Part shown: in pieces, positions 26,805 to 62,420 of the stretch
Position numbering within the stretch: position 1 is the stretch's first letter
How the letters are laid out: every line of letters starts with the position of its first letter
IMG/VR virus record: IMGVR_UViG_3300044796_000662
Location: 186,001-250,000 of that record
Direction: 5' to 3' (one strand)
Length of the DNA: 64,000 bases
Position numbers and translations under genes: made by a program
The notes under the pieces: model-generated
The model's database searches: none
What the model was told of the DNA's origin: nothing
The model's input: only the letters and a program-made list of their open reading frames with translations

Positions 26805-27059
26805 CTACGCGCTACCCGTGATCGCGAGGCTGAAGATCATCCCGTCCTTGACCCGCACACTTTCGCTCGGAGCGAGGCAGCCATCCTGCTTGGGGCAGTG
26901 CCCGTGCTGGTAGACAATCGTGATGACCGCCCCAGGCAGCTTGGACCAGGCGATCATCTTCGGTCTGTCCTCGTAGGCGATCTCCACGACGTCCGCGTAG
27001 GACAACTCGGCAGCCGCGGTCTCCACCTTGCGCGTGTTCACAGTGATGATCGCCATCAT
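26805..27059 (-). CDS. Ubiquitin-like (multiubiquitin-domain, beta-grasp) protein
   Basis: IITVNTRKVE....LSYADVVEIAY...ITIVY..G.....G.L.P.ESVRVKDGMIFSL..T matches the bacterial multiubiquitin-domain pattern. Confidence 0.75.
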   Translation of the reverse strand: MMAIITVNTRKVETAAAELSYADVVEIAYEDRPKMIAWSKLPGAVITIVYQHGHCPKQDGCLAPSESVRVKDGMIFSLAITGSA

Positions 27060-28018
27060 CCGGACCCTCCCACAAAAGCCTTCGGGCGACCCACTGTGCG
27101 TGGATGCTCGATGCCGAACTCCTTGAGATAGCGGCTGACGGTGTTGTATCCGACGTTCAAACGTCGCCCGATCTCCCGAAGAGGCACTCCTTCGGTTGCT
27201 AGCTCTTGGAGTGCCTCTCTGGTGAGGGTCTTCCGGACCTGGTAATGCGGCCCCTGGAAGCCAAACGTCAACTTCTTAGACGTCATGCACTCCGGCATGT
27301 GCGGCTTGACAAGGGAGATGAAGAGGTGGGCCTGCTCCTCCCCGTCGAAAATGAAGTCGCCAGTAGTCTCTGTGTGCCACTCCCACCTGGGATACAGGCT
27401 GAACTTCGCGAAGATGTCGAACGCGATCTGACGGCTCTCAGGAGACAAGCCAAACGTGATGCGAGGCCACCAGCCGATGGACCCATCGTCCATGTACCAG
27501 ATAGCCAGGGCGAACGCGTCCACGTACTGGATGACCTCAGGGCGGAGTCTCTTCACGGTGCTAGTGCCGTAGAACAGATCGAACCACTGGTTGAGGAGCC
27601 GATGAGCAGCCGTCTCGAAACGCCACCCCTGAAAGTCCTTCCCCTTGAGAGTCCAGGTGACCGACTTCACTCCAGACTTCACCCAGGTACCCCACTCGGA
27701 GACCTTCCACTGAAGGTACTCCTTCTGATCGTTGCCATGGTTTTCGCGGAAACGGGTCGAGTGCGTCAGTCGTTGTAGACTACCATCGCCCAACATCGAG
27801 CCCACGAGAAACGATCGAAGGCGGCCTTCAATGGGTACCACCTCATGACGCTCGGTTCTCTGGACCGTCTCGATACAGAACCTCTTCCTCCAGGAACGAA
27901 CCCTCTTGAGAGTCACGTCAAGCCCGAGACGATCAACGATCTCGGCGTCAGTCAGTTTCTCTTCTCGATAGAGCCGGTGCAGTTCCTCTGCGGTAACAGG
28001 GCAAGGTATAGGTCGCAT
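27056..28018 (-). mobile_element. Free-standing LAGLIDADG homing endonuclease with terminal HTH domains
   Basis: Motif 1 FLVGSMLGDGSL, motif 2 LAIWYMDDGS; HTH LREIGRRLNVGYNTVSRYL; more AT-rich than flanks. Confidence 0.85.
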
Positions 28019-50571: not shown

Positions 50572-51471
50572 TCAGGTGACAGTCAGAGTGACCGACAGGT
50601 CTTGGTAGGAGTTGCTAGAGAAGCCGCTGACCCGGAGCGTCTCCGTGTACGTGCCCGGCTGAAGGTTGCAGGACGTGGACACTGCGACCGACACGTTGAC
50701 CGCACCGCTCGAAGCGATGGTGCCAGACGACGGCGTGAAGCTGGTCAGCCAGGGCGACAGCCCAATGAGCTTCTGCACCTGGAAGTTGAGGATCGAACCC
50801 GCGGGCCCCGTGTTCTGCACCTGGAAGGTCTGTGCGGGGATGGGGACAGGCGGATTGCTGAACGCGATCCCGTTGAACGAGAGCGCCGTGGGAGACAGGG
50901 TGATCGTCGCTTGCGGTAGAACCGTGATCGTGACCGGGATGGTCTGGGGGTTGTTCGTCGCGTTCACGTCTTGGATGGTGACAGTCGCCGTGTAGGGGCT
51001 GTTGAGTGCAAGCAGGTCAGTCCCATCCACGGACACGTTGGTCATGCCCGAGGCGCCGAAGGCGATACCGCCCATGTTCGCCGGCGTCGCCTGCAAGTAG
51101 TCCGCTGACGTGGTCACGGAGGGGGACAGGAGCGAGCCGTACACGCCACTGTTCGTGACCGTGATGATCTGGGGCGTTCCGAACCCCTGCCCCTGCGTCG
51201 TCGTGAACGCAAGCGAAGTCGGCGCTGCCACGATGAGCGGAGCGAACGCCGATTGCAGCTCCGTGATGCTGTTGCCCATGGCCGTGACCACCGGGCCGGG
51301 CAACGGGATGTTGTCCCGAAGCAGCCCGAACGGGCTCACGATGTCCCGGACTTGAAAGGACACCACCGCCCTCGACACGTCAACGCGTGTCGTCCACCGC
51401 CACGTCCCCTGAGGAACCTGGATGGCGTACTGGTAGTCCTGAGTCTGTAGGTTGGACGCGAGGCTCGGCAC
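50572..51471 (-). CDS. BACON/Ig-like domain virion protein
   Basis: Two repeats of PTxLxF...Q...V.N.G..GS.L...W/YL...P..G. Confidence 0.75.
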   Translation of the reverse strand: MPSLASNLQTQDYQYAIQVPQGTWRWTTRVDVSRAVVSFQVRDIVSPFGLLRDNIPLPGPVVTAMGNSITELQSAFAPLIVAAPTSLAFTTTQGQGFGTPQIITVTNSGVYGSLLSPSVTTSADYLQATPANMGGIAFGASGMTNVSVDGTDLLALNSPYTATVTIQDVNATNNPQTIPVTITVLPQATITLSPTALSFNGIAFSNPPVPIPAQTFQVQNTGPAGSILNFQVQKLIGLSPWLTSFTPSSGTIASSGAVNVSVAVSTSCNLQPGTYTETLRVSGFSSNSYQDLSVTLTVT

Positions 51472-51530
51472 TGTATGGACGCTCCGGTGCTCACGGAACG
51501 TGGCCGATAAAAGAAACCGCGCCGGTTCGG

Positions 51531-51749
51531 CTAGTTGGGCCGGGTCGGAAAGACCTGTTTGGCCACAAAACGCGACAAACCGTCGAGGCGATGCATCGCC
51601 CGAAAAAGCCGGTGACGCACGCGACCCTGCGTCAGCCCCAGGGCGGCGGCTGCCGCCTTGATGGGGTAGGGCTCGTTCCGACTTCTCATCTCATCCAGGG
51701 TCCGAAGGATCTGGACGTCCATGTCGTCGATGATGTCAGAGGACTTCAT
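51531..51749 (-). CDS. Small HTH protein (copy of second HTH of upstream gene)
   Basis: Start MKSSD 51749; DVQIL...AAALGLTQGRVRHRLFRA. Confidence 0.7.
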   Translation of the reverse strand: MKSSDIIDDMDVQILRTLDEMRSRNEPYPIKAAAAALGLTQGRVRHRLFRAMHRLDGLSRFVAKQVFPTRPN

Positions 51750-52371
51750 CACCGCCACGATTGGCCCACTGGGGGAGTTTGACCTCGCGGAGGATGTTGA
51801 AGCGCTTCGAGCTGATCGCGTTGAAGACCTTGTGGTACGGGATGAACTTCCCATCCTTGGCGGCGGCGTCCTTGAGGGTCTTGACCGCCTTGAAGAAGCG
51901 GTGTCTCACGCGCCCCTGTGTGAGCCCCAGGCGGCTGGCCACCTCACTCTGGCAGGTCGTCTGCCACATGCCGATGAGGATGTCCACGTCGATGTCCTTG
52001 AAGACTTCGGGCAGATCGCGCCGCAAGTCCTCTTCGGTCACGGGCGGGATGCTGAGCAGGAACTTGATGCGCTGCAAGCCTCGATCGAGTCGATAGCTGA
52101 TCGCAGCCTGCGTCACCCCGAAGATCTCGGCGATGTCCGCCTGACGCTTCTTCTGGATGTAGTAGAGCTGGATGAGATCCGCCTCCCTTTGGGGGATGCG
52201 ATTGAGCAGAGGCATGATGCGGTCTTCGTAGTCCCCGTCTTGGAGGATCTTCTCGACCGTATCGTCCTCGGGCTCTTGTACCGGCTCTTCGTCGCTGTAG
52301 GGATCGTCGTTGGTGGCAAAGCGGTTGGCGAGTTCGGACGGGTCAACCGGAATCACGTAGCCGATGGTCAT
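51736..52371 (-). CDS. Tandem sigma70 region-4-like HTH protein
   Basis: LNRIPQREADLIQLYY....QADIAEIFGVTQAAISYRLDRG and QSEVASRLGLTQGRVRHR; ATG 52371 with GAGGGA SD. Confidence 0.8.
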   Translation of the reverse strand: MTIGYVIPVDPSELANRFATNDDPYSDEEPVQEPEDDTVEKILQDGDYEDRIMPLLNRIPQREADLIQLYYIQKKRQADIAEIFGVTQAAISYRLDRGLQRIKFLLSIPPVTEEDLRRDLPEVFKDIDVDILIGMWQTTCQSEVASRLGLTQGRVRHRFFKAVKTLKDAAAKDGKFIPYHKVFNAISSKRFNILREVKLPQWANRGGDEVL

Positions 52372-52408
52372 GTGGGTTCCCTCACGCGCGGGCTGCGCGG
52401 TTGCGGCT

Positions 52409-54385
52409 TCACCGAGCGCGTTCGTTGAAGAACACGGCCAGGATAGGCTCGGCCTGTACATCCACATCTGTGAGTCGCTCAGCGGCGACCTTCTGATCTG
52501 GGTTTGGCACGACCTCCGTGAGGGGAACGTCCCGGAGGGTCATGATGTCGAGGTTCAAACGAACCTGTGCTTCAGCGTCCCGGAGGCACTGATAGCGGAG
52601 CTTAGTCAAGCCTGCCAGATTCGAGGCGTAGATGCCATCTATGGTTCCGTAGAGCTGGACCAACCCCAGAAGCACCTTCTGTGGAACGGTCGGAACCCCA
52701 GGCAGGTTGTCTGACGAATCCCCAAGCAGTGCGCGAAGAGTCACGATCTGTGACGGCCCCACACCCCACTCCTGCGTCAGTGCGTCGATGTCGTACAGCA
52801 CTTCCTTTCGCTTACCTTGTGCCGGCGTCAGTAGACGGTCGGTCTCTGTCACGAGCTGTAGAAGGTCACGGTCCGAGGAGAGGACCACGTTGTTCTGGCC
52901 CTTCAAGGTGCCACGCAGGAGGCTTGCGATGGCATCGTCGGCCTCCTCCCCCTCGTTGTAGAGCTGTGTAACCCCCAGAATCGGGAGCACCTCGCGCAGC
53001 CAGGCCACCTGGTCCCAGCGCACGCCCCCTGTCTCTTCTTCCGCGAAGCCGCTCGAACGGTTGGCCTTGTAATCGGCGTACTTGGCCTTGCGGGTTCGAT
53101 TCGAGCCATCCCAGACCACGTAGATGCTGGCCCCTGGGAACCGCTTGAGCAGGCTTGCGGTCGAGCGCAGAAAGCCGAAGAGCACGCCCGTGTGCCTCTG
53201 TTGCGTGTCCCGCATGTCCGACATGCCGGGCGCGTAGAAGCAGCGATAGGCGAGGTTGAAACCGTCGATGATGACGTTCTGGACTTCCACGCTGGTCTCC
53301 TCAATCTCGCGCTCGATCTCCGAGACGTCGTCTGACAGGTTGTCCAGGCTCTCTTGCAAGTCCTGCAACGTGAGCCACTTGAAGTACCGTCCCTCGATCT
53401 CCGAGAAGGGCGTCTCGACGAGGCTCTCGCGGACAAGGGGTACGAGACCGTCCCAACGCTGTGTGAGACCATCAAGCAGGATCGCTCGGTCCCCTTGCTC
53501 CTTGAGCTTGCTCGCATCGAGGGGGATGTAGAACGACCGAACGAGGTTGGAGCGATGCTCCAGCCCCTCAGCCCAGTCGTTCAGTTGCGTATAGACGTCG
53601 AGTCTCGGACGTATCCGGGTGATGAGCGTGGGCGCGGTAAGTGCTGTCTGGATGGTCGTGAAACTCTCGACCTTGGACACCCAAGACTGGAACTGGAGAT
53701 ACTCCTGGTAGTGCTTGTTCAGGCGCGCGAAGCCGACGAGCTTTGGGGCCTTGAGCAGATCGTAGAAGTCGTTGAACCAGTCACGGACGCCTGCGAAGCG
53801 GTCCATGGCCGGAGCCTTGGGCGCCTTGGAGACGAGCCGGAGGAAGCTCCGGGGCAGCGTGATGATCGAGTCCTTGGAGCGTAGAAGAACCCGTACCTGG
53901 ACCTTGTCCTCTTCGGGAATCTCCTCGATGACCTTCGCCTGGATCTGGCGATAGGCCCCTGAGGTGATGAGAACCGTGTCGTCGATACCGATCCCCTGGT
54001 CGGTCTCGACATGGATCTGCCGCTTCATCTTGTCGATGGCGGAGTTCTCGACGAAGGCTAGCTGCCGGACAGGACGCCCCCCGTTCTCGGGTCGGACGAT
54101 CTTCGTGAGCACCTTCTGGACGTACTTGGAGTTGTCCAGTCTGTTGTAAAGCGTATCGGGGTGCTTGTGCCGAATGAACGCGTAGCCATCGACGAGGTAG
54201 TGCACTACCCGGTCCTCACCGATCTGCGTGACCGCAGCCGGAATGAACACTTCGGCGCCCTTCACTGCGTAGGTGATGGAACGCCGGACGATGTCCGGGT
54301 CCTCCCCTTCGGCCTTGGAACTCAGTTCCAAGATGACCCACTGGTTGGGATCGCTCGTCACAACGACTACGCCCTCCTGGGCCAT
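52409..54385 (-). CDS. NusG (NGN+KOW) fused to Pol I-type 5'-3' exonuclease/flap endonuclease
   Basis: N-term WVIL...EVFIP...LVDGYAFI...V.ITSGAY....AKV.E; C-term IIDGFNLAYR, VVWDG, YKANR, EADD, SSDRDLLQL, GDSSDNLPGV. Confidence 0.85.
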   Translation of the reverse strand: MAQEGVVVVTSDPNQWVILELSSKAEGEDPDIVRRSITYAVKGAEVFIPAAVTQIGEDRVVHYLVDGYAFIRHKHPDTLYNRLDNSKYVQKVLTKIVRPENGGRPVRQLAFVENSAIDKMKRQIHVETDQGIGIDDTVLITSGAYRQIQAKVIEEIPEEDKVQVRVLLRSKDSIITLPRSFLRLVSKAPKAPAMDRFAGVRDWFNDFYDLLKAPKLVGFARLNKHYQEYLQFQSWVSKVESFTTIQTALTAPTLITRIRPRLDVYTQLNDWAEGLEHRSNLVRSFYIPLDASKLKEQGDRAILLDGLTQRWDGLVPLVRESLVETPFSEIEGRYFKWLTLQDLQESLDNLSDDVSEIEREIEETSVEVQNVIIDGFNLAYRCFYAPGMSDMRDTQQRHTGVLFGFLRSTASLLKRFPGASIYVVWDGSNRTRKAKYADYKANRSSGFAEEETGGVRWDQVAWLREVLPILGVTQLYNEGEEADDAIASLLRGTLKGQNNVVLSSDRDLLQLVTETDRLLTPAQGKRKEVLYDIDALTQEWGVGPSQIVTLRALLGDSSDNLPGVPTVPQKVLLGLVQLYGTIDGIYASNLAGLTKLRYQCLRDAEAQVRLNLDIMTLRDVPLTEVVPNPDQKVAAERLTDVDVQAEPILAVFFNERAR

Positions 54386-55860
54386 GTGCGCTCGAATTCC
54401 CGTCGCCAGTCTTCCGGCGTCAGAATGCGATTCATCTCGTCCTCTGTTCCTTGATGGAAGGACAGCGGAACGTCAATGTTGCCTGGGTTGGAACGGCTCC
54501 GAGGCCGCCCCAACGGCACAGCCTTGTGGTCTTCGGAGGTGAGAGCGTAAGGGTCCCCTGAGCCGATAGCTCCGATGCCGTCCGCCCGCATCTTGCCGTT
54601 GCCCCCATTGGTTGCCGCGTGGACGATGGGGACTTGGGGTGCCGGAGAGGGGGAGGGTGGCGCCGCCGTTGTCACGGGAGACGGTGCAGACACCGGCTGT
54701 GACACCGCAGGAGGCGTTGAGGGGGTAGCTTGAACCGCTGCGGTCTGAACAGGGACCGAAGCGACGGCCATGGGTGCAGACACGGACAGCACAAGAGGCT
54801 GCGCCCCCATCTGTTGGGGAACGGCGCCGTTGGACTGCGCGAGGCTCACGATGTCGCAGACAAGGCTGATCCGCGACACTGCCCGATGCCGAAGGAAGTA
54901 TTCGGCCAGCTTGGTGCACCCCGTGGTGAACCGCTGGTAGACCTGCTCGGCCAGTTGCCGGTCCACGTACACGAAGTCGGCCGCCATGTTGTTGGCAAGC
55001 CGGAACGAGTTCATGGCCGCCTCGGCAAGACCTGCGGCCACCTGGTCAGCGGGCACTCGCTCGCATGCCTGGTCCACGAGTTCGAGAGCCTGCTTGGGGT
55101 TCCCGAGCGCAAGGAGGATCTGGTAGTACGTCGAGACGACACTGAGGTGTAGGTACTCTCGAACAGACTCGACCGTGACCGACCCCATCTGGGCGATCAT
55201 CTCCAGCTTGTTCAAGATGTCCCGGACGTGCCCGCCCGAGTGATCGATCACGATCAACACCGCGTCGTCTTGGTACTCGACCTTCTCGGTTTCGAGCACC
55301 ATTCGCATCCGCCCGAGCACGTCCTCACGAGTGACCTTACGGATCGGGTACGTCTCGCAGCGGCTCTGGATGGTCCCGCGGATGTTCTGAGGCTCGGTCG
55401 TACAGAAGATACCGAGGAGCTTCTTCTCCTCGATGGGCTTGAGCAGGACGTCCTGAGCCTCCTTGCTCATCCGGTGCGCCTCGTCGAAGAGGTAGATGCG
55501 GATGGGCGCCCCCATGGGCGGCATGTACGGGAGGTCTTCGAGCAGGTCACGGACGTTGGCAACGCCGCCGTTACTAGCCGCGTCGCGCTCCGTGAAGGCA
55601 CTGGGCTGGTCCTCCAGAATCGCGAGGCACTGCTCGCAGACGTTGCAGGGCTCCCACTCCTCACGGTTCAAGTTCTGACAGAGGGCCGCCCTCGCCAGCA
55701 CACGGGCAAGGGTGGTCTTGCCCTGCCCGTGACCGCCCGCGAAGATGTAGGACGTGTTCAGGATGGTCCCGTTCCTCAAGCGAGCCTTGATGAGCTGGAC
55801 GGATCCCTCCTGACCGAGCACCTCGGAGAACTTGCGCGGGCGGTACTTAGTGTCCCACAT
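54367..55860 (-). CDS. dnaX: DNA polymerase III gamma/tau-like clamp loader subunit
   Basis: KYRPRKFSEVLGQ, GGHGQGKTT, C..PCNVCEQC Zn module, DEAH, SRC, Pro-rich C-terminal linker. Confidence 0.92.
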   Translation of the reverse strand: MWDTKYRPRKFSEVLGQEGSVQLIKARLRNGTILNTSYIFAGGHGQGKTTLARVLARAALCQNLNREEWEPCNVCEQCLAILEDQPSAFTERDAASNGGVANVRDLLEDLPYMPPMGAPIRIYLFDEAHRMSKEAQDVLLKPIEEKKLLGIFCTTEPQNIRGTIQSRCETYPIRKVTREDVLGRMRMVLETEKVEYQDDAVLIVIDHSGGHVRDILNKLEMIAQMGSVTVESVREYLHLSVVSTYYQILLALGNPKQALELVDQACERVPADQVAAGLAEAAMNSFRLANNMAADFVYVDRQLAEQVYQRFTTGCTKLAEYFLRHRAVSRISLVCDIVSLAQSNGAVPQQMGAQPLVLSVSAPMAVASVPVQTAAVQATPSTPPAVSQPVSAPSPVTTAAPPSPSPAPQVPIVHAATNGGNGKMRADGIGAIGSGDPYALTSEDHKAVPLGRPRSRSNPGNIDVPLSFHQGTEDEMNRILTPEDWRREFERTWPRRA

Positions 55861-55879
55861 GGTGCTTGGTTCGTGTCAG

Positions 55880-55905
55880 CTACACCGTTCAGGAATCCTG
55901 AACGG
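55880..55905 (-). promoter_or_regulatory. CGGTGTAG motif overlapped by a 21-bp palindrome
   Basis: Motif 55880-55887; CCGTTCAGGA-A-TCCTGAACGG at 55885-55905. Confidence 0.55.
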
Positions 55906-56380
55906 TTTCCTCTGCGATGCTGGCGCTGACGACGTCGTTGACCAAGTCCTCGATCTTGACGTCCTTGGCGATCGAAACGAAGCCGTTCAGCTCCTCATTC
56001 CAGGCGCCGTGACGCTGAAGGATGGACGAGAACTCCTGGACGTCCGGCTTGCGGATCTTCCAGGACATCTCCCCCGACTTCTCGTCTTCCTCGCCGTAGC
56101 AGCGCTCCAGGAGGTGGTCGATGAGAGCCGTCCTCTGTTCGACGCCCAGCTCGTTGAACTCGTCCAGAGCGACTTCGATCAGGAAGTCCACCTCCAGAAG
56201 GAACTGAAGAACGCCAGAGATCTTGCGGACCTTGCCCAGGACAGGGCGACCGGACTCCTTGGAGGCCGTGTCCACGTAGATGTACTTGACGCGGGCCGTG
56301 GCCAGCTCGGGGTGGTAGCTCGGGATGAGCTTCAACGCGATCTGCTCCACCGTGTCGGCAATTCCGTAAACCTTAGCCAT
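55889..56380 (-). CDS. Phage metallopeptidase-like protein (HExxH degenerate)
   Basis: VLGKVRK...DFLIEV....F..L..EQR.ALIDHLLER...IRKPDVQEF..I..RHG.W. Confidence 0.75.
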   Translation of the reverse strand: MAKVYGIADTVEQIALKLIPSYHPELATARVKYIYVDTASKESGRPVLGKVRKISGVLQFLLEVDFLIEVALDEFNELGVEQRTALIDHLLERCYGEEDEKSGEMSWKIRKPDVQEFSSILQRHGAWNEELNGFVSIAKDVKIEDLVNDVVSASIAEETVQDS

Positions 56381-57101
56381 CGTTTCTCTCCATCAGGCGG
56401 TTGAAGGGCTCTACACCCTCCCGAATGAATTTGCCGAGATACTCTTCACCCCGAAGCTCCCAGAGGTCCCCTGGGTCCTTCGTCATCTTGCCGTTGGGCA
56501 TGGGCAACTTGGCCCAACGGATGCCCTCGATCTGGTACTCACGCCCATGCTCCTTGTAGAAGCTGGCGGCGGCCTTTTGGCCAGTGGTGTCATTATCATA
56601 CGCAAGCACGATACGCTTGCATGTTCTCCGCAGCGTGGCGAGAAAGGGCCCAACGACACGTGCGGTCATGGTCGCGACCACCGCTGGGGAATGCCTCTGG
56701 ACCGGGAACAGGTCGTTGGCCCCCTCAACGAGGGTCACCGATTCCGTGGCCCAAATGTGCGGCATCGCCTGCCCGAGTCCGAAGAGGATCGGCTCCCCGG
56801 TATCGAGCATGAAGTTCGAGTTGAACTTGCGGCTCCTGTCCACGGGGCGGAACTGCACCCCACGGATCTCCCCGAGCGCGTTGGTCAACGGATAGACGAA
56901 CACGTCGTCAAGAACCGTCCCCGAACCGTACTGTTTGAGGAACTTCGGATCGTAGTCCAACGGCGGAAGCGTCCGCTTCAAGTAGCCGATGTTGTACTCC
57001 CTGATCTGCTCGTCGGAACAGCCGCGGACGTTGAGCGCCTCGACCACCCGCTCTGTCATGAGCGAGCGGGCGTACTCGACTAGTTGATCAAGCCACGCCA
57101 T
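56373..57101 (-). CDS. dnaG: DnaG-type DNA primase catalytic core (TOPRIM), no Zn-binding domain
   Basis: LFGL, LVEGANDL, LAYDNDTTGQKA, KDPGD. Confidence 0.85.
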   Translation of the reverse strand: MAWLDQLVEYARSLMTERVVEALNVRGCSDEQIREYNIGYLKRTLPPLDYDPKFLKQYGSGTVLDDVFVYPLTNALGEIRGVQFRPVDRSRKFNSNFMLDTGEPILFGLGQAMPHIWATESVTLVEGANDLFPVQRHSPAVVATMTARVVGPFLATLRRTCKRIVLAYDNDTTGQKAAASFYKEHGREYQIEGIRWAKLPMPNGKMTKDPGDLWELRGEEYLGKFIREGVEPFNRLMERNDG

Positions 57102-57723
57102 CGCCGACCACCATGATTGCCCGATCCGCCCTCTGGATCATGAGCCCCAGGTAATCGCCCACGCGCGTATACAGGCCCGCGAACTCCGGGTGTGTCGAGA
57201 CCAACGCTGCCCCGGGGGGGAGGTCGGCCGTCATCACCTGCATGTCGTCCACGGTTGCCACGTATCCTTGCGCCTTCATCATCTGGGAGGCCCACTTGGG
57301 ATCGAAGTCTGGACCGCAGATGTCCGGGAGAACGCTCTCTGGGACAACCAGAAGAGCCGGTTCAAGACCCAACCCTCGTAGGCGGGTGACCGCCTCTGTT
57401 ACGCTGTTACACCGATTGCCCCACTGATTTTTCAGGGAAAAATCGAGCAGTGACATGTACAGCTCGATGACGAGCTGCTCCTCTTCGTCCACTGGAACCT
57501 CGGAGAAACCGTACCGAGCCGTCCCGCGAACAGAGCTTCGTCGCGTCTGTACGAACTGACGCGCTGCGTTCGTGGACAGAAGCGGCTCTACGTCATCGGG
57601 GACCTCAAGCTCATTCAGTGCCGGGCGCGAGGAGACCCCCGACCGGATGGAGGCTTGAAGTTTCTCCGGCATCCGCATGTTGCGCCGCTCGGGCACGAAG
57701 AGGCGCCCCAACACCGTTGCCAC
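57088..57723 (-). CDS. Hypothetical protein; C-terminal half resembles part of the capsid (HK97) fold
   Basis: By-eye alignment to this window's MCP (see findings). Confidence 0.55.
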   Translation of the reverse strand: MATVLGRLFVPERRNMRMPEKLQASIRSGVSSRPALNELEVPDDVEPLLSTNAARQFVQTRRSSVRGTARYGFSEVPVDEEEQLVIELYMSLLDFSLKNQWGNRCNSVTEAVTRLRGLGLEPALLVVPESVLPDICGPDFDPKWASQMMKAQGYVATVDDMQVMTADLPPGAALVSTHPEFAGLYTRVGDYLGLMIQRADRAIMVVGDGVA

Positions 57724-57726
57724 GGG

Positions 57727-58293
57727 TCACTCCTCGACGATGGGCAGCGACGGCTTGGACTGAACAGGCTCCCACGGAGGTAGAAGCTTCTCCGGGTCCT
57801 CCGGCTGGCTCAAGGGTTCGACCTGGATGCGCAGGAGCTTGTACCAGAGGCGCTTCCACCAGGGGATGTCCGGCACCTGCATCTTGTTGATCGCCCATAG
57901 CAACCCGTAGACCTCGGGCATGTTGACCCTGAGCCAGTCCGGATCCTTGAGCTGTTGCGCGAAGTCGTTCCAGATCGTCTTCTTGTTGGCCTTGGGGTTG
58001 AAGTACGGGCAGCGCTGAGCGTCGATGGGCTCCTCGCAAATCGTACCCGGCCAGTCCTCGACGCTTGAGGCGCCGAGCATGCAAAGACCCATCGACGGCG
58101 TTCCAGGGGACGTCCCGATGCGGTTGTAGTTCTCGTTGACCTCGCCCGCGATGCGCTTGCGCACGTCCAGCGGGTGCCGATAGTTGTGCGTACAGAGGTG
58201 CGGGAGCCGGTGCTCCGCGAGCTTCACTCTGGCGGTCAGCTCTTCTACGAGCAGAAACCTGATCCGCGCTTCGATCTCGGTTGCATCTCTCAT
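57727..58293 (-). CDS. Cys-rich hypothetical protein
   Basis: CTHN...C...C...CPYF; ATGA-coupled. Confidence 0.7.
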   Translation of the reverse strand: MRDATEIEARIRFLLVEELTARVKLAEHRLPHLCTHNYRHPLDVRKRIAGEVNENYNRIGTSPGTPSMGLCMLGASSVEDWPGTICEEPIDAQRCPYFNPKANKKTIWNDFAQQLKDPDWLRVNMPEVYGLLWAINKMQVPDIPWWKRLWYKLLRIQVEPLSQPEDPEKLLPPWEPVQSKPSLPIVEE

Positions 58294-58952
58294 TTGGGTC
58301 CTCGGAGCCGTTTCAGGCCCAGTGACCAGGTTGTATCAGAAGATTGCTCTTCGAAGCCCTGGTAGGCAGACTTCGCGTGGTCCAAGAACGCCTGGTTGTG
58401 CGTGACGAGAAGGATCGGGATGTTCGTCGTTTCCGACAACTTCCTGAGGAACTGGCCGGTCTGATCCACGTAGTAGTCACTGACGGCCGACAGAGTCTCA
58501 TCCAGGAACAGGACAGGGAACTTCTTGAGGCGCATGAGCGCCAAGAGCCGCAGCGTCAAAGACGCGATGCTCGACACACCACCGCCCGTTGTTTCTAGCG
58601 GCGGTCCGACGATCTCGATGTCGTTCTGCGTGCGCTTGACGAGCAGGTCGATGGAGACCTTCCCTCGGGACTGACCGACCTCAGCCTGAAAGGAGAGGTC
58701 GATGTCGAAGAAGATGGACTTGAGCCCCTCGGTCACGATGGACTCGATGGCCTTCACCTGGTCCATGACCAGCTTGTCCATGAGCAGGCGAAGAAGCTCC
58801 CCTGTTTTGGAGAGCTTCTCCACCCGCTCGGACAACACCGTGATCTCCCTCGCCGTCTTGTCCCGCTGCTGGACAAGGGAGTCCCTCCGCGTCTGAACAC
58901 GGGTCGCGGAGGTCTTGAGTGCTTCAACCCTGGTCTTCCAGGCGTCGGTCAC
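58290..58952 (-). CDS. sbcC: SbcC/Rad50 C-terminal half
   Basis: GTGA-coupled start 58952; coiled coil, signature-like TGGG, Walker B LFLDE, H-loop LVTH. Confidence 0.85.
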   Translation of the reverse strand: MTDAWKTRVEALKTSATRVQTRRDSLVQQRDKTAREITVLSERVEKLSKTGELLRLLMDKLVMDQVKAIESIVTEGLKSIFFDIDLSFQAEVGQSRGKVSIDLLVKRTQNDIEIVGPPLETTGGGVSSIASLTLRLLALMRLKKFPVLFLDETLSAVSDYYVDQTGQFLRKLSETTNIPILLVTHNQAFLDHAKSAYQGFEEQSSDTTWSLGLKRLRGPK

Positions 58953-60259
58953 TCGTACGACGGCATGAACCGAGTCACCGTGCATGAGATTGCTCCTGCC
59001 GGAACCTGCCCTCCCTCGGGCAGTTCACCGGCCACCGTCTTGCCCTCGGCATCGAGGTAGAACCTGTCGATGGTCCGGAGGTAGGCGCCACCCTTGGGGC
59101 GCTTCTCGCTCGGGTCGATCGGGTAGACCCGAAGCTCGACGGTGCCACCCTCGGCGTCCTTGAACAGCGAGAGGAGCTGCTTGCGGTTGATGAACGGCTC
59201 CAGGGTACGGTCGGGCTCCGCCAGCGACGAGTCCTTGCCGACGCTGATGAACATGCTCTTGATGCCCTTGGCGTTACCCTCGGCCGCCTCCAACTGAAGA
59301 GTGTTGGAGTCCTTGTTCCAGAGGAGCCGCACCTTGTCGTGCTTGTCCCCCAGCTCCTCGCCCATGTAGCCGAGCGCGTCGATCATCTCGGCCTTGGGGA
59401 TCTTGAAGACGAACTTGTCGCCGCCGAGCCCGTAGTACGAGTGCTTGGCGTGCAGCTTCGTGGTGTGCGTCCAGCCGAAGACCCGGCTTTCCGACTCGTC
59501 GCAGACGAAGGTCTTCGTGTCCGTAGACTTGATGACCGCCGTCCCCTCGATCTTGCCGAGGAAGCTGAGAAGCAGACCGAGATGCTCGGCCTTGAGCGCG
59601 AAGCTCTTGCCCTTGAACGCCTCGCAGTCGAAGTAGAACGCCTGCGAACCGTTGGCAGCGTAGAGCACGCCGTCACCCTTCTCGTAGGGCTTGATCATCT
59701 GACCCTTGTTCTTCGGGTCCTCGACCTCCGCGTCCTTGTCGAACATCTGGATGGTCTTGTGCTGATCCTCGGCACGGGGATTGTTCTCCCCGTGGAAGTC
59801 CTTGGACAGACTGAGAGCCTTGCGAAGGACGGCGGCGGGGAACTTGCCGGTCTCCTTGGCGGCCTTCAGCTCCTTGTCGAAGGTAGCCAGCCACTTCGGG
59901 TCGAAGGCGGGGCGGGTGCCGCCGGCCCCACGCCCGGGGTCGTAGCTGACGCTGAACTGGTCGCCATCCCTCTTGGACTCGAAGCTGATCGGGCCCGAGA
60001 AATACTTGAACGCCCCGATCGATTCGTACGGGTAGGCGAAGACGCCCTCACCATCCGCGTCGAAGATGTCCATGCGTGCCCGAGCGACATGGTTCGCGTC
60101 GGCCGAGTACATGTACCCCTCGGTCGAGTTGCGGATGTAGAAGAGGAAGCCCGTGTCCCTCTCCTTGTTGCACGCCCTGGGGACCACCGTCTGAACGGCG
60201 TCGATCGCGGCGTTCAGGTGGGCGGCTTGCACTGAGAACTTGATCATGTTCATCCTCAT
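58949..60259 (-). CDS. dnaN: DNA polymerase III beta sliding clamp-like protein
   Basis: IKFSV....L..AI..V..VVP start, three-domain periodicity (LYAANG, FINRKQLLSL), size and context near DnaX. Confidence 0.65.
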   Translation of the reverse strand: MRMNMIKFSVQAAHLNAAIDAVQTVVPRACNKERDTGFLFYIRNSTEGYMYSADANHVARARMDIFDADGEGVFAYPYESIGAFKYFSGPISFESKRDGDQFSVSYDPGRGAGGTRPAFDPKWLATFDKELKAAKETGKFPAAVLRKALSLSKDFHGENNPRAEDQHKTIQMFDKDAEVEDPKNKGQMIKPYEKGDGVLYAANGSQAFYFDCEAFKGKSFALKAEHLGLLLSFLGKIEGTAVIKSTDTKTFVCDESESRVFGWTHTTKLHAKHSYYGLGGDKFVFKIPKAEMIDALGYMGEELGDKHDKVRLLWNKDSNTLQLEAAEGNAKGIKSMFISVGKDSSLAEPDRTLEPFINRKQLLSLFKDAEGGTVELRVYPIDPSEKRPKGGAYLRTIDRFYLDAEGKTVAGELPEGGQVPAGAISCTVTRFMPSYE

Positions 60260-60528
60260 TTCTTCTCGTAGGCCGAGAAGGCTGACTCGGTCTTCGTCAA
60301 GTCGGACTCGTACTCACCGAGCATCTGTTCGAGTTCCGCTTTGGCCTTGTCCCGCTCCCCCACGAGAGTCTTCGGGTCGTAGCCGGCGGCCTTGATCTCC
60401 TTGATCAGAGCCGCCAGTTCCTCTTTCTTGGCCTGAAGCTGGCCGCCGAACTGGGCCTTTTTGGTAGCCACAGCGTCCGTTCGCTTCTGAAGGTCGTCGA
60501 TCTTCTTCTTGATCTCGTCGGGCGTCAT
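60256..60528 (-). CDS. Small coiled-coil protein (possible middle piece of split Rad50)
   Basis: Helical hairpin with central GYDP turn. Confidence 0.65.
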   Translation of the reverse strand: MTPDEIKKKIDDLQKRTDAVATKKAQFGGQLQAKKEELAALIKEIKAAGYDPKTLVGERDKAKAELEQMLGEYESDLTKTESAFSAYEKK

Positions 60529-60546: not shown

Positions 60547-61434
60547 TTATTCGTCGATAGCGACATCCTCTACACCTGACGCTGGGGAAATCTGAGGACG
60601 ATTTTCAGAGGTCATTACCTGGCCTTCCGGGCACGCGAAGACGAACGGGCAGAAGCCGCAGGCACCCTTCTTCGCCCTGGCGGGGAACGCCTGTGCGGCA
60701 ATCGGCAGCCTCTTTCGCTGTTCGATCTCCTCGATGGTACGTATGACCGTCTCTTGCAGCTCGTCTACGGCGTCCCGCGTGGGGACTGACCAGTCCACAG
60801 CCTCGTCGGGCGGGAAGCGCCAGAAAACGAACGCCACCTGGTCGGGGAGCGACCCTGTCTTGCGGCGGTGAAGCATCGAGTACCAGTGGAGCTGCTCGAT
60901 GTCCACGTACTTGTCCCGGTGCCTTGAGCCCTTACCATCGAGGATGATGAGGTCCCCGAGGGGGTGCAGACGTCGCATCCGGAAGTCACAGCGTCCCCCG
61001 AGCATGTGCCCGCTGATCTCGGAGTCCAGCTTCACCTCTGCGGCCGCATCCGTACCGAGCAGCTTGAACTTGCGGATGATGGCAAGGCTGTTCGGGATCG
61101 CCTCTCGGATCTCCTGTATGACCTGGTCCAGAGAGTGCGGGCCGTTCTTCTTGAGCTTGGGATCCTTCCAGTTGAAGATCCCGCCGCCCTTGATCTCGTT
61201 ACGCATCGTCTCGGCAACGACAGAGGACACCCGACTGAGCATCTCTTTGGCGGGATCGGGGAGCTTCCACATCTTGTCGCGGTAGAAGTGCTCGACGATG
61301 ATGCCGATGCAAGACCCGTAGAGCATGTTCACCCGGTTCTCGGGCGTCGGCACCTTGGTCTTGTTGACGTACGAGTGCCAATACTGCCTGGGGCACTCCC
61401 TGTACTTCTTGAACCCGGAGTAGGAGAGGTACAT
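60547..61434 (-). CDS. PD-(D/E)XK RecB/Cas4-like nuclease with Fe-S cysteines
   Basis: LSYS....Y.ECPRQY, GRCD, IILDGK, QLHWY, CGFCPF...C. Confidence 0.88.
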   Translation of the reverse strand: MYLSYSGFKKYRECPRQYWHSYVNKTKVPTPENRVNMLYGSCIGIIVEHFYRDKMWKLPDPAKEMLSRVSSVVAETMRNEIKGGGIFNWKDPKLKKNGPHSLDQVIQEIREAIPNSLAIIRKFKLLGTDAAAEVKLDSEISGHMLGGRCDFRMRRLHPLGDLIILDGKGSRHRDKYVDIEQLHWYSMLHRRKTGSLPDQVAFVFWRFPPDEAVDWSVPTRDAVDELQETVIRTIEEIEQRKRLPIAAQAFPARAKKGACGFCPFVFACPEGQVMTSENRPQISPASGVEDVAIDE

Positions 61435-62420
61435 TAGCCCACGCCCGTTTCTGCTCTTGCGCGTTCCAGGTAGTCGATGGCGAGCTGCTTGACGTCGGAA
61501 GCGAACGAGAGCCCCTGGATGTTGGCCTCGATGGTCTGCGACACGTCAAAGGACGCCTCGCTCTGCAACCGCTCAATGAACTGGTCGATGTTCTCGTGCT
61601 CGCGCTCTGCGCGTTCCTTGCGTTCGAGGTCGAACACTTCGGACGCCGGCGCGACGGACAGCAACAGAGGAGTAATCTCGGCACGCCCCGGCTCGAAGCC
61701 CAAGAGTGCCACCTTTGGGGATCGCTGAAGGTTCTCGTTGATGAGAGCCCCGCGGCTGACAGCACCGAGATTGACGAACTGCTTGCCCCCGAGCTGAACG
61801 ATCCCCTGATCCTTGTGCCAGTGCCCGAAGCACCACACATCTGGACCGTCCTTCGTGACAAGCTGGTCGTACCGGAAGACAGGCTCGTTGAAGAATTCGC
61901 GCACGTTCGGGGGCGGTTCCTCTCCTGCCAGCGAGTGCACGATGGCCACGAGGAAGTCATCACCCGGCTGCTTCTGAATGGCCCTCAGGTCGTCAGCGGT
62001 ACGGTTCGCACTGTAAGGCACCCCGACCACTCGCACGCGCATCCCGCCGTCCTCGAAGACCGTGCTCCGCAAGTGCCGAAAGACCCCCGTCTCGTAGAGA
62101 ACACCCAGAGGTTGACCGGCCACGCTGTCGAGTCGGTTGTAGGCGATGTCGTGGTTGCCCTCGACGCAATACGTGGGCACCCCATACGTGTTGTGCACGC
62201 TAGCCGTTTCCACAACGATCGCGTGGGGGTTGCGACTGGCAGCCTTGATGTGGAAGTAGTCGCCCCCATCGAGGACGGCCTTGACCTCATGCTCCTTGGA
62301 GAAAGCCCCGATCTGCCGGAGGTTGGACCAGATCTCCGCGGGGTAGTCCGCCTTCCAGGAGGAAGGGCTACGGTCGCAGAGATGGGTGTCTGTCCGGTAG
62401 AGCAGAGAGACGCGCGGCAT
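61434..62420 (-). CDS. sbcD: SbcD/Mre11 metallophosphoesterase nuclease
   Basis: DTH, GGDYFH, GNHD, GHWH, NLGA. Confidence 0.9.
   Translation of the reverse strand: MPRVSLLYRTDTHLCDRSPSSWKADYPAEIWSNLRQIGAFSKEHEVKAVLDGGDYFHIKAASRNPHAIVVETASVHNTYGVPTYCVEGNHDIAYNRLDSVAGQPLGVLYETGVFRHLRSTVFEDGGMRVRVVGVPYSANRTADDLRAIQKQPGDDFLVAIVHSLAGEEPPPNVREFFNEPVFRYDQLVTKDGPDVWCFGHWHKDQGIVQLGGKQFVNLGAVSRGALINENLQRSPKVALLGFEPGRAEITPLLLSVAPASEVFDLERKERAEREHENIDQFIERLQSEASFDVSQTIEANIQGLSFASDVKQLAIDYLERARAETGVG

What the first reader, a model, noticed from the sequence alone, without database searches (positions are those of the whole stretch)
51531..60259. System-level: transcription factors interleaved with clamp, clamp loader and primase
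Seen: beta-clamp, primase, DnaX, NusG-exonuclease, tandem sigma4 and mini-HTH are in one co-oriented, mostly overlapping run directly upstream of the late block, whose candidate promoters lack a -35. Known: T4 late transcription uses a minimal sigma plus co-activator tethered to the sliding clamp loaded at nicks. Inference: an independently assembled, replication-coupled late-transcription apparatus built from bacterial-type parts.
Basis: inference. Interest (0 to 1): 0.65.

Follow-up and report, generated by a model that had tools for sequence, protein, structure and literature searches.

The report
Huge-phage replication operon with transcription factors
A strictly conserved gene run in a clade of uncultivated 400-570 kb phages mixes a sliding clamp, clamp loader and primase with a NusG-nuclease fusion and an unusually conserved double sigma-region-4 protein, and it ends at a conserved promoter-like site without a -35 in front of the virion genes; this suggests, but does not show, that late transcription is tied to replication.

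Summary
On the minus strand, 51.5-60.3 kb encodes a divergent DnaN-type beta-clamp, a Toprim primase-like protein, a DnaX-type clamp loader, a NusG(NGN+KOW)-helical linker-FEN 5'-nuclease fusion, a 211-aa tandem sigma-region-4 protein and a small HTH. These genes overlap or nearly abut and lie just upstream of the virion block (TerL, portal, protease, major head protein).

The 19-gene order is identical in 52 of 52 related loci from phages of up to about 530 kb. The tandem-sigma4 protein is the most conserved gene of the block (median 67% identity; clamp 32%). A 12-nt element, gTTTcCTTTTAT, with no conserved -35, sits before the first downstream gene in every relative.

- No gp55-like or sigma-region-2 factor was detected.
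- The sigma4 protein has no canonical clamp-binding motif.
- The complex prediction gave no answer.

The NusG-FEN fusion does carry a conserved PIP/clamp-binding-like C-terminal tail, which could link RNA polymerase to the clamp. The small HTH is a lineage-specific partial duplicate.

Best reading: a conserved replisome/recombination operon that ends in the clade's likely late-gene transcription factor. Clamp coupling remains a live minority hypothesis.

The parts
62422..63666 (-). SbcC/Rad50-like ATPase, N-terminal half (Walker A plus coiled coil); start of the conserved recombination/replication run within the window
   Evidence: PF13175 E 1.9e-9 and PF13476 E 2.1e-8. Same position in L002, L013 and L014.
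61434..62420 (-). SbcD/Mre11-like metallophosphoesterase
   Evidence: PF00149 E 6e-12. Conserved at a median of 58.6% identity.
60547..61434 (-). PD-(D/E)XK nuclease
   Evidence: PF12705 E 1.5e-16.
60256..60528 (-). 90-aa conserved protein of unknown function; the only hits are weak matches to coiled-coil families
   Evidence: Only weak matches to coiled-coil families. Present in 49 of 51 loci.
58949..60259 (-). Divergent DnaN-type beta sliding clamp (436 aa)
   Evidence: Family profile versus PDB beta clamps: 8dt6 E 6.9e-11, 7rzm E 2.4e-8. 1vpk at E 7.8e-5 with a 4-sequence profile. Top Foldseek hits are all DnaN clamps. The family has 240 representative clusters. It is the fastest-evolving gene of the block (median 32% identity).
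58290..58985 (-). 231-aa ATPase matching the C-terminal half of SMC/Rad50/ABC heads; probably the other half of a split SbcC
   Evidence: PF02463 positions 136-215 of 220, E 1e-4. TIGR02168 positions 1105-1160, E 6e-7. phrog_15167 E 1.4e-21.
57727..58293 (-). 188-aa conserved protein of unknown function with four invariant Cys
   Evidence: No Pfam, PHROG, NCBIfam or PDB-profile hit. Invariant C34, C71, C86 and C95.
57088..57723 (-). 211-aa conserved protein of unknown function
   Evidence: No hits. Present in 48 of 51 loci.
56373..57101 (-). Toprim-domain, DnaG-type primase-like protein (242 aa; no zinc-binding domain detected)
   Evidence: PF13155 E 3.3e-7, TIGR01391 E 3.4e-14, phrog_47 E 5e-15.
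55889..56380 (-). Phage metallopeptidase-family protein (163 aa)
   Evidence: PF18894 E 1.1e-24.
54367..55860 (-). DnaX (gamma/tau)-type AAA+ clamp-loader subunit (497 aa)
   Evidence: PF13177 E 1.6e-24, TIGR02397 E 8e-63 (212.8 bits, cut-off 250), phrog_5846 E 7e-57.
52409..54385 (-). NusG-like (NGN about 15-128, KOW about 137-186) - helical linker (about 190-366) - FEN/5'-3' exonuclease (371-622) - C-terminal tail with conserved [DE]P[IV]LAxFF
   Evidence: The family has at least 204 members, many on 200-530 kb contigs.
51736..52374 (-). Tandem sigma-70-region-4 protein (211 aa): conserved N-terminal peptide, acidic linker, two ECF-type sigma4 HTH domains, conserved C-terminal tail; no region 2
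   Evidence: PF04545 E 1.1e-15 (two stretches), PF08281 E 1.6e-11, TIGR02937 region-4 part only. True start taken from L002. 884 homologues, of which the best 120 are all at least 66% identical. Alignment.
51531..51749 (-). Small HTH (about 72 aa), a diverged copy of the second sigma4 domain; specific to this genome
   Evidence: PF04545 E 5.7e-6. Sequence. In other loci the tblastn matches fall inside the tandem-sigma4 gene.
51507..51518 (-). Promoter-like element GGTTTCTTTTAT, 35 nt upstream of the start of the 299-aa gene
   Evidence: Best PWM hit in the genome at 20.2 bits. Conserved in L002, L013 and L014 and in 46-55 unique loci. No information in the 44 nt upstream.
50572..51471 (-). 299-aa protein, first gene of the downstream block that leads to TerL (43105-45129)
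   Evidence: Conserved in this position in 50 of 51 loci. TerL, portal, protease and major head protein are identified.

Best explanation
This stretch is the 3' half of the core replication/recombination operon of a large clade of uncultivated huge phages. Relatives include complete genomes of 437-513 kb with terminal repeats.

**What the phage encodes**
- Its own bacterial-type processivity system: a divergent DnaN clamp and a DnaX-type loader.
- A Toprim primase-like protein.
- A split SbcCD-like nuclease.
- A family A polymerase elsewhere in the genome.
- A 5'-flap nuclease fused to a NusG-like NGN+KOW module.

No RNA polymerase was detected in this record or in five relatives, so the phage most probably uses host RNAP (inferred).

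**Proposed mechanism (inferred)**
1. The last conserved gene of the operon is a tandem sigma-region-4 protein. It is most probably the clade's late-gene transcription factor. It would be made together with the replication proteins. It would then act through host RNAP, presumably at the beta-flap as sigma region 4 does.
2. Its target would be a -10-like, -35-less element, gTTTcCTTTTAT. The best and most conserved copy lies immediately downstream, in front of the virion and packaging block.
3. The NusG-FEN fusion most probably tethers a primer, flap or R-loop-processing nuclease to transcribing RNAP, and through its PIP-like tail to the clamp. There it would act at the interface of replication and transcription on a genome whose genes run one way for about 230 kb.

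**Shown here:** gene identities, order, conservation and the DNA element.

**Inferred:** the RNAP contacts, the role of the sigma4 protein at the element, the timing of expression and any clamp contact.
For: - **Identities:**
- **Strict synteny:** 52 of 52 loci.
- **Conservation:** the tandem sigma4 protein is the most conserved of 19 genes (median 67%, versus TerL 59.6% and clamp 32%). The best 120 of its 884 homologues are all at least 66% identical. This fits a protein that contacts a conserved host machine and a conserved DNA site.
- **The DNA element belongs to the downstream gene:** it stays 14-38 nt from the start of the 299-aa gene while the sigma4-to-p299 spacer varies from 67 to 2155 nt, including an inserted Endonuclease_7 gene in L013. 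It is therefore not the end of the sigma4 gene.
- **No -35:** no information in the 44 nt upstream, and no sigma70-type promoter on this strand.
- **Element distribution:** 15 of 22 PWM hits are intergenic, while about 14% of the genome is intergenic.
- **No phage RNAP:** no RNAP beta/beta' domains in this record, and no beta' (Rpb1) domain in five relatives, four of them complete.
- **Virion genes downstream:**
- **Precedent for the position:** late activators encoded at the replication/packaging junction are known, such as RinA upstream of terS (PMC3152322).
- **Polymerase:** family A polymerase present; no Pol III alpha or Pol B.
Against:
- The element does not match a canonical -10 and lacks an A at the -11 equivalent. 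Its count in the genome is no higher than in shuffled sequence (22 versus 19.5). Only its intergenic placement and its cross-genome conservation argue for function.
- In this genome alone, a weak hairpin precedes the T-run.
- A sigma4-only protein cannot melt DNA, so a region-2 function must come from the host sigma or from an unrecognised phage protein.
- Conserved order in a clade with a colinear core genome is weak evidence for functional coupling.
- The record is only 76% complete.
Confidence: 0.5

Rival explanations
1. One reading: replication-coupled late transcription of the T4/Mu type. The phage clamp would be loaded at nicks or primer ends by the DnaX-type loader. It would then slide to -35-less late promoters and activate host RNAP through phage factors tethered to it. 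In the version best fitting the data, the NusG-FEN fusion is the tether: its NGN domain on the beta' clamp helices and its C-terminal PIP-like tail on the clamp. The tandem-sigma4 protein would occupy the beta-flap.
For: - The clamp, the loader and two RNAP-type factors sit in one conserved operon next to the late block.
- The promoter-like element has no -35, as in T4 and Mu (PMC7892883, PMC12867686).
- A conserved [DE]P[IV]LAxFF motif lies in a tail beyond the FEN fold.
- The tandem-sigma4 protein has conserved N- and C-terminal peptides flanking its HTH domains. This is the same layout as the two clamp-binding motifs of MuC (PMC12867686).
- T4 has a comparable gene neighbourhood.
Against: - No gp55-like or region-2 factor was found, and none is conserved in relatives.
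- The terminal peptides of the sigma4 protein do not match QL[SD]LF or Qx[DE][LM]F.
- FEN nucleases bind clamps in ordinary replication, so the tail needs no transcriptional explanation.
- The clamp is the least conserved gene of the block while the sigma4 protein is the most conserved.
- No functional data exist.
Confidence: 0.17
2. Sigma appropriation or decoy. The tandem-sigma4 protein would not be a promoter-specificity factor. Instead it would compete with region 4 of the host sigma for the beta-flap. That would shut off -35-dependent host and early transcription, leaving RNAP able to use -35-independent phage promoters. This is functionally like T4 AsiA(/MotA) or Thermus phage P23-45 gp39.
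For: - The protein has region 4 only and no region 2.
- Its extreme conservation fits a contact with a conserved RNAP surface.
- The phage promoter-like element lacks a -35.
- gp39 is a phage protein that binds host RNAP and inhibits initiation (PMC3351154). Sigma appropriation in T4 is described in PMC6755090.
Against: - Both HTH domains keep ECF-type recognition-helix patterns, which suggests DNA binding.
- A simple decoy would not need two domains plus conserved tails.
- There is no direct test.
Confidence: 0.15
3. No transcriptional system at all. On this reading the co-location is only inherited synteny. The T-rich element would be an RNA-level signal (terminator U-tract, processing or translation signal). 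The NusG-like module would bind nucleic acid or a helicase rather than RNAP. The sigma4 protein would be a generic DNA-binding protein, for example involved in packaging or partition.
For: - The whole 19-gene block is colinear in all relatives, so order alone is uninformative.
- The element's count is not above shuffled expectation.
- A weak hairpin precedes the T-run in this genome.
- KOW domains also bind partners other than RNAP (general knowledge).
Against: - The hairpin is not conserved in relatives, while the 12-nt element is.
- The element tracks the downstream gene across insertions.
- The whole NGN+KOW architecture matches NusG/RfaH/Spt5.
- Region-4 domains are RNAP-flap binders in every characterised sigma.
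Confidence: 0.12

Closest known systems
Phage T4 late transcription (gp45 clamp, gp44/62 loader, gp55, gp33)
   Same: - The clamp and loader are phage-encoded.
- The late promoter-like element is a single -10-like element without a -35.
- RNAP-directed factors are encoded beside SbcCD-like, clamp and loader genes. In T4 the order is 55-47-46-rpbA-45-44-62.
- The phage depends on host RNAP.
   Different: - The clamp here is DnaN-type and the loader DnaX-type, not PCNA-like gp45 and RFC-like gp44/62.
- No gp55 homologue or other region-2-like factor was detected.
- The flap-directed candidate is a true sigma region 4 in tandem, not gp33.
- No clamp-binding motif has been shown on the transcription factors.
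- The element is TTTCCTTTTAT, not the A/T-rich T4 late -10-like element (TATAAATA, recalled from memory, not checked here).
Phage Mu MuC/Mor activators using the host beta-clamp (PMC12867686)
   Same: - A bacterial-type beta-clamp could take part in late transcription.
- An HTH activator has conserved terminal peptides.
- The late promoters have no evident -35.
   Different: - Mu uses the host clamp and sigma70, whereas this phage brings its own clamp.
- The tandem-sigma4 protein is not a Mor/C homologue.
- Its termini do not match Qx[DE][LM]F or QPDLF.
NusG paralogues (RfaH, LoaP) and NusG/Spt5
   Same: The NGN+KOW architecture and fold match. A long co-directional gene array would benefit from a processivity or antitermination factor.
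   Different: - The module is fused through a helical linker of about 175 aa to a FEN 5'-nuclease with a clamp-binding-like tail.
- No paper in the searched library contains all four terms NusG, flap endonuclease, bacteriophage and fusion.
- JGI pipelines already label homologues as '5'-3' exonuclease/transcription antitermination factor NusG'.
Stand-alone phage 5'-3' exonucleases/FEN (SPO1 gp32.85-type, T4 RNase H, Pol I N-terminal domain) and eukaryotic/archaeal FEN1 with a C-terminal PIP box
   Same: Both Pfam FEN domains score above their cut-offs. Identity to Bacillus phage exonucleases is 33%. The clamp-interaction-like motif sits in a C-terminal tail, as in FEN1 (general knowledge).
   Different: There is an N-terminal NusG module of about 370 aa with a linker. 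The motif reads E/D-P-I/V-L-x-x-F-F rather than QxxLxxFF or QL[SD]LF.
Late-operon activators encoded at the replication/packaging junction (RinA/ArpU type; PMC3152322)
   Same: It is a small sigma-region-4-like DNA-binding protein. It is encoded as the last gene before the packaging and virion block, with its presumed target promoter immediately downstream.
   Different: It has two tandem region-4 domains, a huge-phage context and far higher conservation. The target lies six genes upstream of terL rather than at terS.
Minimal sigma factors of 'group 2' jumbo phages (PMC7824862)
   Same: Both are phages without their own RNAP that encode reduced sigma-like HTH proteins to redirect host RNAP.
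   Different: Group 2 phages have family B polymerase, PCNA-type clamps, RFC-type loaders and gp33 orthologues. This clade has Pol A, a DnaN-type clamp and a DnaX-type loader.

Membership tests
T4-type clamp-activated late transcription | Phage-encoded sliding clamp and clamp loader | tested here: met
   The clamp and the DnaX-type loader are identified. They are of the bacterial beta/DnaX type, not the gp45/gp44-62 type.
T4-type clamp-activated late transcription | Sigma-region-2-like promoter-specificity factor (gp55) | tested here: not met
   No match to phrog_234 or phrog_12791, and only sub-threshold matches to PF04542 (E 0.09 or worse), in the 363-kb record. That record is 76% complete. 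Region-2 sigmas score above the cut-off in 1 of 5 relatives.
T4-type clamp-activated late transcription | Beta-flap-binding co-activator (gp33) carrying a clamp-binding motif | tested here: inconclusive
   No gp33 homologue was sought by name. The sigma region 4 domains could bind the flap. No canonical clamp-binding motif is present in the tandem-sigma4 protein.
T4-type clamp-activated late transcription | Late promoters made of a -10-like element without a -35 | tested here: met
   gTTTcCTTTTAT is conserved in 46-55 unique loci, with no information in the 44 nt upstream. Promoter function itself has not been shown.
T4-type clamp-activated late transcription | Late transcription depends on replication or clamp loading | not testable with these tools
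   This needs infection or in vitro experiments.
Bacterial DnaN beta sliding clamp | Sequence homology across the three-domain clamp | tested here: met
   The profile of 74 members hits 8dt6 at E 6.9e-11 over profile positions 3-362 of 411. Pfam DNA_pol3_beta is detected in only 2 of 74 members.
Bacterial DnaN beta sliding clamp | Three-domain ring fold, dimer | tested here: inconclusive
   The AF2 model has pLDDT 52. Its top Foldseek hits are all clamps but with TM of about 0.25. The oligomeric state was not tested.
NusG/Spt5 family | NGN domain followed by a KOW domain | tested here: met
   AF2 pLDDT 83. Foldseek hits to NusG/RfaH/Spt5 with E down to 4.6e-9. PDB profile hit to 2lq8 at E 1.8e-7. 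KOW Pfam in 14 of 39 members. TIGR00922 gives only E 3.3e-4, far below its cut-off.
NusG/Spt5 family | Binding to the RNAP clamp helices | not testable with these tools
FEN / Pol I-type 5'-3' exonuclease | N-terminal resolvase-like and C-terminal SAM-fold domains | tested here: met
   PF02739 at 103.7 bits (cut-off 34.3) and PF01367 at 50.1 bits (cut-off 40).
Sigma-70 family sigma factor | Region 4 (-35/flap-binding HTH) | tested here: met
   PF04545 at 57.3 bits (cut-off 24.1) with two stretches; PF08281 at 44.1 bits.
Sigma-70 family sigma factor | Region 2 (core binding, -10 recognition and melting) | tested here: not met
   TIGR02937 aligns only to its region-4 part, positions 86-162 of 165. 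The 55 residues before domain 1 are a short conserved peptide plus a variable acidic linker. The protein is therefore not a bona fide sigma factor.
DnaX (gamma/tau) clamp loader | AAA+ clamp-loader module | tested here: met
   PF13177 at 87.1 bits (cut-off 27). TIGR02397 at 212.8 bits, below its equivalog cut-off of 250. Delta and delta' partners were not identified.
DnaG primase | Zinc-binding domain plus Toprim RNA-polymerase domain | tested here: inconclusive
   The Toprim part matches. No zinc-binding domain is found in the 242-aa protein. The neighbouring 188-aa protein has four invariant Cys, but its role is unknown.
Mor/MuC clamp-dependent activators | Terminal clamp-binding motifs Qx[DE][LM]F / QPDLF | tested here: not met
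   The termini of the tandem-sigma4 protein are GYVIPVDPAELANRF and FNILREVKLPQWANRGGD. Neither fits the consensus given in PMC12867686.

The most novel reading that the evidence does not exclude
A third, independently built clamp-coupled transcription machine. In this huge-phage clade the NusG-FEN fusion and the tandem-sigma4 protein would together act as a 'split sigma-like' adaptor on host RNAP. The NGN domain would sit on the beta' clamp helices, where sigma region 2 and gp55 sit. The sigma4 domains would sit on the beta-flap, where gp33 sits. The fusion's PIP-like tail would hold the phage's own DnaN-type clamp. Clamps loaded at replication intermediates would then switch on the -35-less TTTCCTTTTAT late promoters.
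Probability: 0.12. Interest if true: 0.88.

Novelty: new variant of a known kind. Interest (0 to 1): 0.6.

Why it matters
Clamp-activated transcription was long thought to be peculiar to T4, and it was extended to Mu only in 2026 (PMC12867686). A widespread clade of 400-570 kb environmental phages keeps three things locked in one operon next to a conserved -35-less late element: its own bacterial-type clamp and loader, a NusG-nuclease fusion, and a hyper-conserved region-4-only protein.

If these parts work together, they would show a third, independently built way of tying virion production to genome replication. They would also show a new use for the universal NusG fold.

Even on the conservative reading, three things are concrete and testable entry points into how uncultivated huge phages take over host RNA polymerase:
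- the NusG-FEN fusion, with more than 200 members and, in a limited literature search, no paper describing it;
- the tandem-sigma4 factor, with about 880 members and more conserved than the terminase;
- the conserved DNA element.

Tried and rejected
- **Complex prediction, clamp (alignment A3) versus tandem-sigma4 (A5).** Score 0.00 with verdict 'no answer'. This is not evidence for or against binding.
- **Phage collection.** Megablast of the 8.7-kb stretch and tblastn of the clamp found nothing.
- **First clamp model.** The model from 4 sequences was poor (pLDDT 52). It was used only for fold ranking.
- **The 188-aa and 211-aa proteins.** Atlas look-alikes and PDB profile searches gave nothing.
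- **Distant clamp relatives.** P0261 and P0250 lie on 4-kb contigs with other neighbours (ParB_N, DUF3987), which is uninformative for synteny.
- **A phage-specific clamp-binding motif.** Scanning protein termini found only NusG-FEN with an [ILMV]Lxx[FY][FY]-type C-terminal motif among clear replication proteins. No cognate consensus could be derived.
- **The 243-aa 'tandem sigma4' ORF and 107-aa 'mini-HTH' ORF as listed.** Rejected as too long. The conserved starts give 211 aa and about 72 aa.
- **The T-rich element as a -35 box for the sigma4 domains.** Rejected, because only 14-38 nt separate it from the start codon.
- **GGTGTAG as an RfaH-ops-like site for the NusG module.** Not adopted. 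The motif sits at a fixed 8-12 nt before start codons all over the genome, and it is rare in this operon.

Full report
**Context**

The window is bases 186001-250000 of a 362,937-bp IMG/VR record that is labelled 'provirus' and estimated 76% complete. GC content is about 62%. From about 68 to 301 kb of the record, nearly all genes lie on the minus strand.

Relatives found through the proteins of this locus include records of 437,331, 447,761 and 512,571 bp with direct terminal repeats. Other relatives lie on contigs of up to 530-570 kb. This is therefore a clade of huge phages. The 'provirus' label is probably a trimming artefact. That is my inference: a start-codon-associated motif described below occurs across the whole record, flanks included.

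**Observation check**

The minus strand of 51.5-60.3 kb carries a run of genes with overlaps of 4-37 nt or gaps of 34 nt or less. Family scans identify:
- a DnaX-type clamp-loader subunit (54367-55860);
- a Toprim/DnaG-like protein (56373-57101);
- a phage metallopeptidase (55889-56380);
- an SMC/ABC-type ATPase C-terminal half (58290-58985);
- a 658-aa protein with both Pol I-type 5'-nuclease domains at residues 371-622 (52409-54385);
- a protein with two sigma-70 region 4 matches;
- a small ORF with one region 4 match.

*The clamp.* The 436-aa protein at 58949-60259 has no Pfam hit. A four-sequence profile hits the T. maritima beta subunit (1vpk, E 7.8e-5). The exhaustive search found 240 representative clusters. 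A 74-member profile hits solved beta clamps over nearly the full length (8dt6 E 6.9e-11, 7rzm E 2.4e-8). A low-confidence AF2 model (pLDDT 52) still ranks DnaN clamps first in Foldseek. It is a very divergent DnaN-type clamp.

*The NusG module.* The N-terminal 368 residues of the 658-aa protein fold confidently (pLDDT 83). They form an alpha/beta domain, a five-stranded barrel and a long helical region. The top Foldseek hits are NusG, RfaH and Spt5 (E down to 4.6e-9). The family profile hits T. maritima NusG (E 1.8e-7). KOW is detected in 14 of 39 members. The NusG-exonuclease fusion is real.

*The sigma4 genes.* Comparison with a close relative shows that the tandem-sigma4 gene starts at MTIGY (51736-52374, 211 aa). 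The small HTH is a copy of its second domain of about 72 aa.

*The downstream block.* It contains the large terminase, portal, head protease and major head protein.

**Conservation**

A scan of IMG/VR with the tandem-sigma4 alignment returned 71 loci. All 52 loci with full flanks, counting three from other sources, show the same order:

SbcD - PD-(D/E)XK - p90 - clamp - ATPase - p188 - p211 - Toprim - metallopeptidase - DnaX - NusG-FEN - tandem sigma4 - p299 - p127 - p584 - p667 - p126 - p226 - TerL

Median identity to the window's proteins:

| Protein | Median identity |
|---|---|
| Tandem sigma4 | 67% (highest of the 19) |
| TerL | 59.6% |
| NusG-FEN | 41% |
| Clamp | 32% (lowest of the 19) |

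The word search found 884 tandem-sigma4 homologues, and the best 120 are all at least 66% identical. Their alignment shows:
- an invariant N-terminal peptide (GYVIPVDPAELANRF);
- a variable acidic linker;
- two ECF-type region-4 HTH domains;
- an invariant C-terminal tail (FNILREVKLPQWANRGGD).

The small HTH is not conserved. In other loci its matches fall inside the tandem-sigma4 gene.

**A conserved -35-less element**

Several intergenic regions of the late block in the window share a T-rich YTYTTAT[CG] motif 27-45 nt before start codons. The best copy in the genome (GGTTTCTTTTAT, window 51507-51518, 20.2 bits) lies 35 nt upstream of the 299-aa gene that follows the sigma4 genes.

The same element is found in front of the orthologous gene in every relative examined. 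The consensus is gTTTcCTTTTAT, and some lineages have TTTACTTGTA variants.

The element stays 14-38 nt from that gene's start while the distance to the tandem-sigma4 gene varies from 67 to 2155 nt. In one relative an Endonuclease_7 gene has been inserted between them. The 44 nt upstream carry no information. No sigma70-type promoter is found on this strand in 50-61 kb.

The position leaves room only for a -10-like role with a short leader containing a GAGG-type ribosome-binding site. It cannot be a -35 box.

Caveats:
- The number of PWM hits in the genome equals the shuffled expectation (22 versus 19.5). However, 15 of the 22 are intergenic.
- No transcript data could be obtained.

**What is missing for the T4 model**

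Per PMC7892883, T4 late transcription needs four things:
- gp55, which is region-2-like and recognises the -10-like element;
- gp33, which binds the flap;
- the clamp gp45;
- clamp-binding motifs on gp55 and gp33.

Here, neither the PHROG families that hold T4 gp55 (phrog_234 and phrog_12791, identified) nor Pfam Sigma70_r2 matches the record above threshold; Sigma70_r2 gives only E 0.09 or worse. Among five relatives, four of them complete, region-2 sigmas score above the cut-off in only one. No RNAP beta' domain occurs in any of them, and none in this record. The conserved termini of the tandem-sigma4 protein do not match the beta-clamp motif QL[SD]LF or the Mor/C variants (PMC12867686). The one complex prediction allowed (clamp versus tandem sigma4) gave no answer.

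**What speaks for a link to the clamp**

The NusG-FEN family has a conserved motif beyond the FEN fold: RL.DVDV.P..IL.aFF, which reads EPILAVFF in the window. From general knowledge, this resembles both the PIP box (QxxLxxFF, at the C-terminal end of FEN1) and bacterial clamp-binding peptides. One polypeptide may therefore hold both RNA polymerase and the clamp. FEN nucleases bind clamps in ordinary lagging-strand processing, so this is not specific evidence for transcriptional activation.

T4 has a similar neighbourhood, 55 - 47 - 46 - rpbA - 45 - 44 - 62. The interleaving of transcription factors with clamp genes therefore has a precedent and need not be an independent invention.

**Mechanistic reading**

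The replicase is a family A polymerase (G000 100331-103270). No Pol III alpha or Pol B is present. The FEN domain is thus the separately encoded 5'-nuclease of a Pol A-type replisome that uses a beta-type clamp.

I consider it most likely (0.5) that:
- the operon is the middle-phase replication/recombination operon;
- its last conserved gene encodes the late-gene factor that redirects host RNAP to the T-rich -35-less promoters;
- NusG-FEN works at the replication-transcription interface of a genome transcribed in one direction for about 230 kb.

Alternatives:

| Reading | Confidence |
|---|---|
| Flap decoy or sigma-appropriation role of the tandem-sigma4 protein | about 0.15 |
| No transcriptional system | about 0.12 |

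**Comparison and novelty**

The closest systems are:
- T4 late transcription;
- the Mu MuC-clamp system;
- NusG paralogues;
- FEN1-PCNA;
- RinA-type late activators (PMC3152322);
- the minimal sigmas of group 2 jumbo phages (PMC7824862).

The locus fails the membership test for a T4-type system on the gp55 feature, and for a sigma factor on region 2. What is new is the combination and two protein architectures: NusG-FEN and tandem region 4. No paper in the searched library describes such a fusion, although JGI's automatic names already read '5'-3' exonuclease/transcription antitermination factor NusG'.

I rate it a new variant of a known kind, with interest 0.6.

**Limits**

- No expression data are available.
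- The host is unknown.
- The record is incomplete.
- My gene calls outside the window are heuristic, based on GC3.
- The clamp fold is low-confidence.

Noticed in passing
whole record G000; in the window e.g. 15524, 26035, 26796, 28027, 55880 (minus strand): The motif cGGTGTA[GA] occurs 104 times. At 52 of these sites the start codon of an ORF of at least 50 codons lies exactly 8-12 nt downstream, with a peak of 25 sites at 9 nt. Some sites lie inside the end of the upstream gene. Nothing is conserved upstream of the motif. Permuted 7-mers show no such peak. It is either a non-Shine-Dalgarno translation-initiation signal or a -10-only promoter for leaderless mRNAs; the A would sit at -11 if transcription starts at the ATG. 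It is frequent in the mixed-strand ends of the record and rare in the replication and virion blocks.
   Followed up: partly
window 62422-63666 and 58290-58985 (minus): The SbcC/Rad50-like ATPase appears split into two genes. The N-terminal Walker A plus coiled-coil half and the C-terminal signature/Walker B half are separated by SbcD, a PD-(D/E)XK nuclease, p90 and the clamp gene. The split is conserved across the clade.
   Followed up: partly
window 51531-51749 (minus): The small HTH gene is a diverged partial duplicate (about 40% identity) of domain 2 of the tandem-sigma4 protein. It is found only in this genome. The closest relative examined, L002 (95% identical tandem sigma4), lacks it but keeps the last roughly 17 nt of the ORF and the downstream sequence, which suggests a deletion of about 190 nt there or an insertion here.
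   Followed up: partly
window 27056-28018 (minus); L013 12879-13277; L014 19478-21935: Mobile endonucleases pepper the conserved core. A LAGLIDADG/HNH homing-endonuclease-like gene lies next to the major head protein gene in the window. An Endonuclease_7 gene lies between the tandem-sigma4 gene and its downstream element in L013. An intein (Intein_splicing, LAGLIDADG_3) sits in the terminase of L014.
   Followed up: no
window 57727-58293 (minus): The conserved 188-aa protein has four invariant cysteines and several invariant tryptophans and belongs to no detectable family. It lies two genes upstream of a Toprim protein that lacks a zinc-binding domain, so it might be a separate zinc module of a split primase. 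This is speculation.
   Followed up: partly
G000 301449-301847 (+), outside the window: A second region-4-only protein (132-aa ORF, PF04545 E 1e-12) with a Cys-rich N-terminal part lies in the mixed-strand part of the record.
   Followed up: no
G000 100331-103270 (minus), outside the window: A family A DNA polymerase of 979 aa is the only polymerase family detected. There is no Pol III alpha and no Pol B. The DnaN-type clamp and DnaX-type loader therefore presumably serve a Pol A replicase.
   Followed up: partly
G000 about 271-304 kb, outside the window: Intergenic k-mers are dominated by tRNA T-loop words (GGTTCGATTCC), which indicates a tRNA gene array. The window itself has no tRNA.
   Followed up: no
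window 6907-15228 (minus): A 2773-aa ORF lies in the virion block (GC3 0.77). It was not examined; it could be a tape-measure or another giant virion protein.
   Followed up: no
whole record: IMG/VR labels this record and two relatives as 'provirus'. Three other relatives of 437-513 kb have direct terminal repeats. The GGTGTAG start-codon motif runs through the flanks of this record as well. The label is therefore probably wrong.
   Followed up: partly
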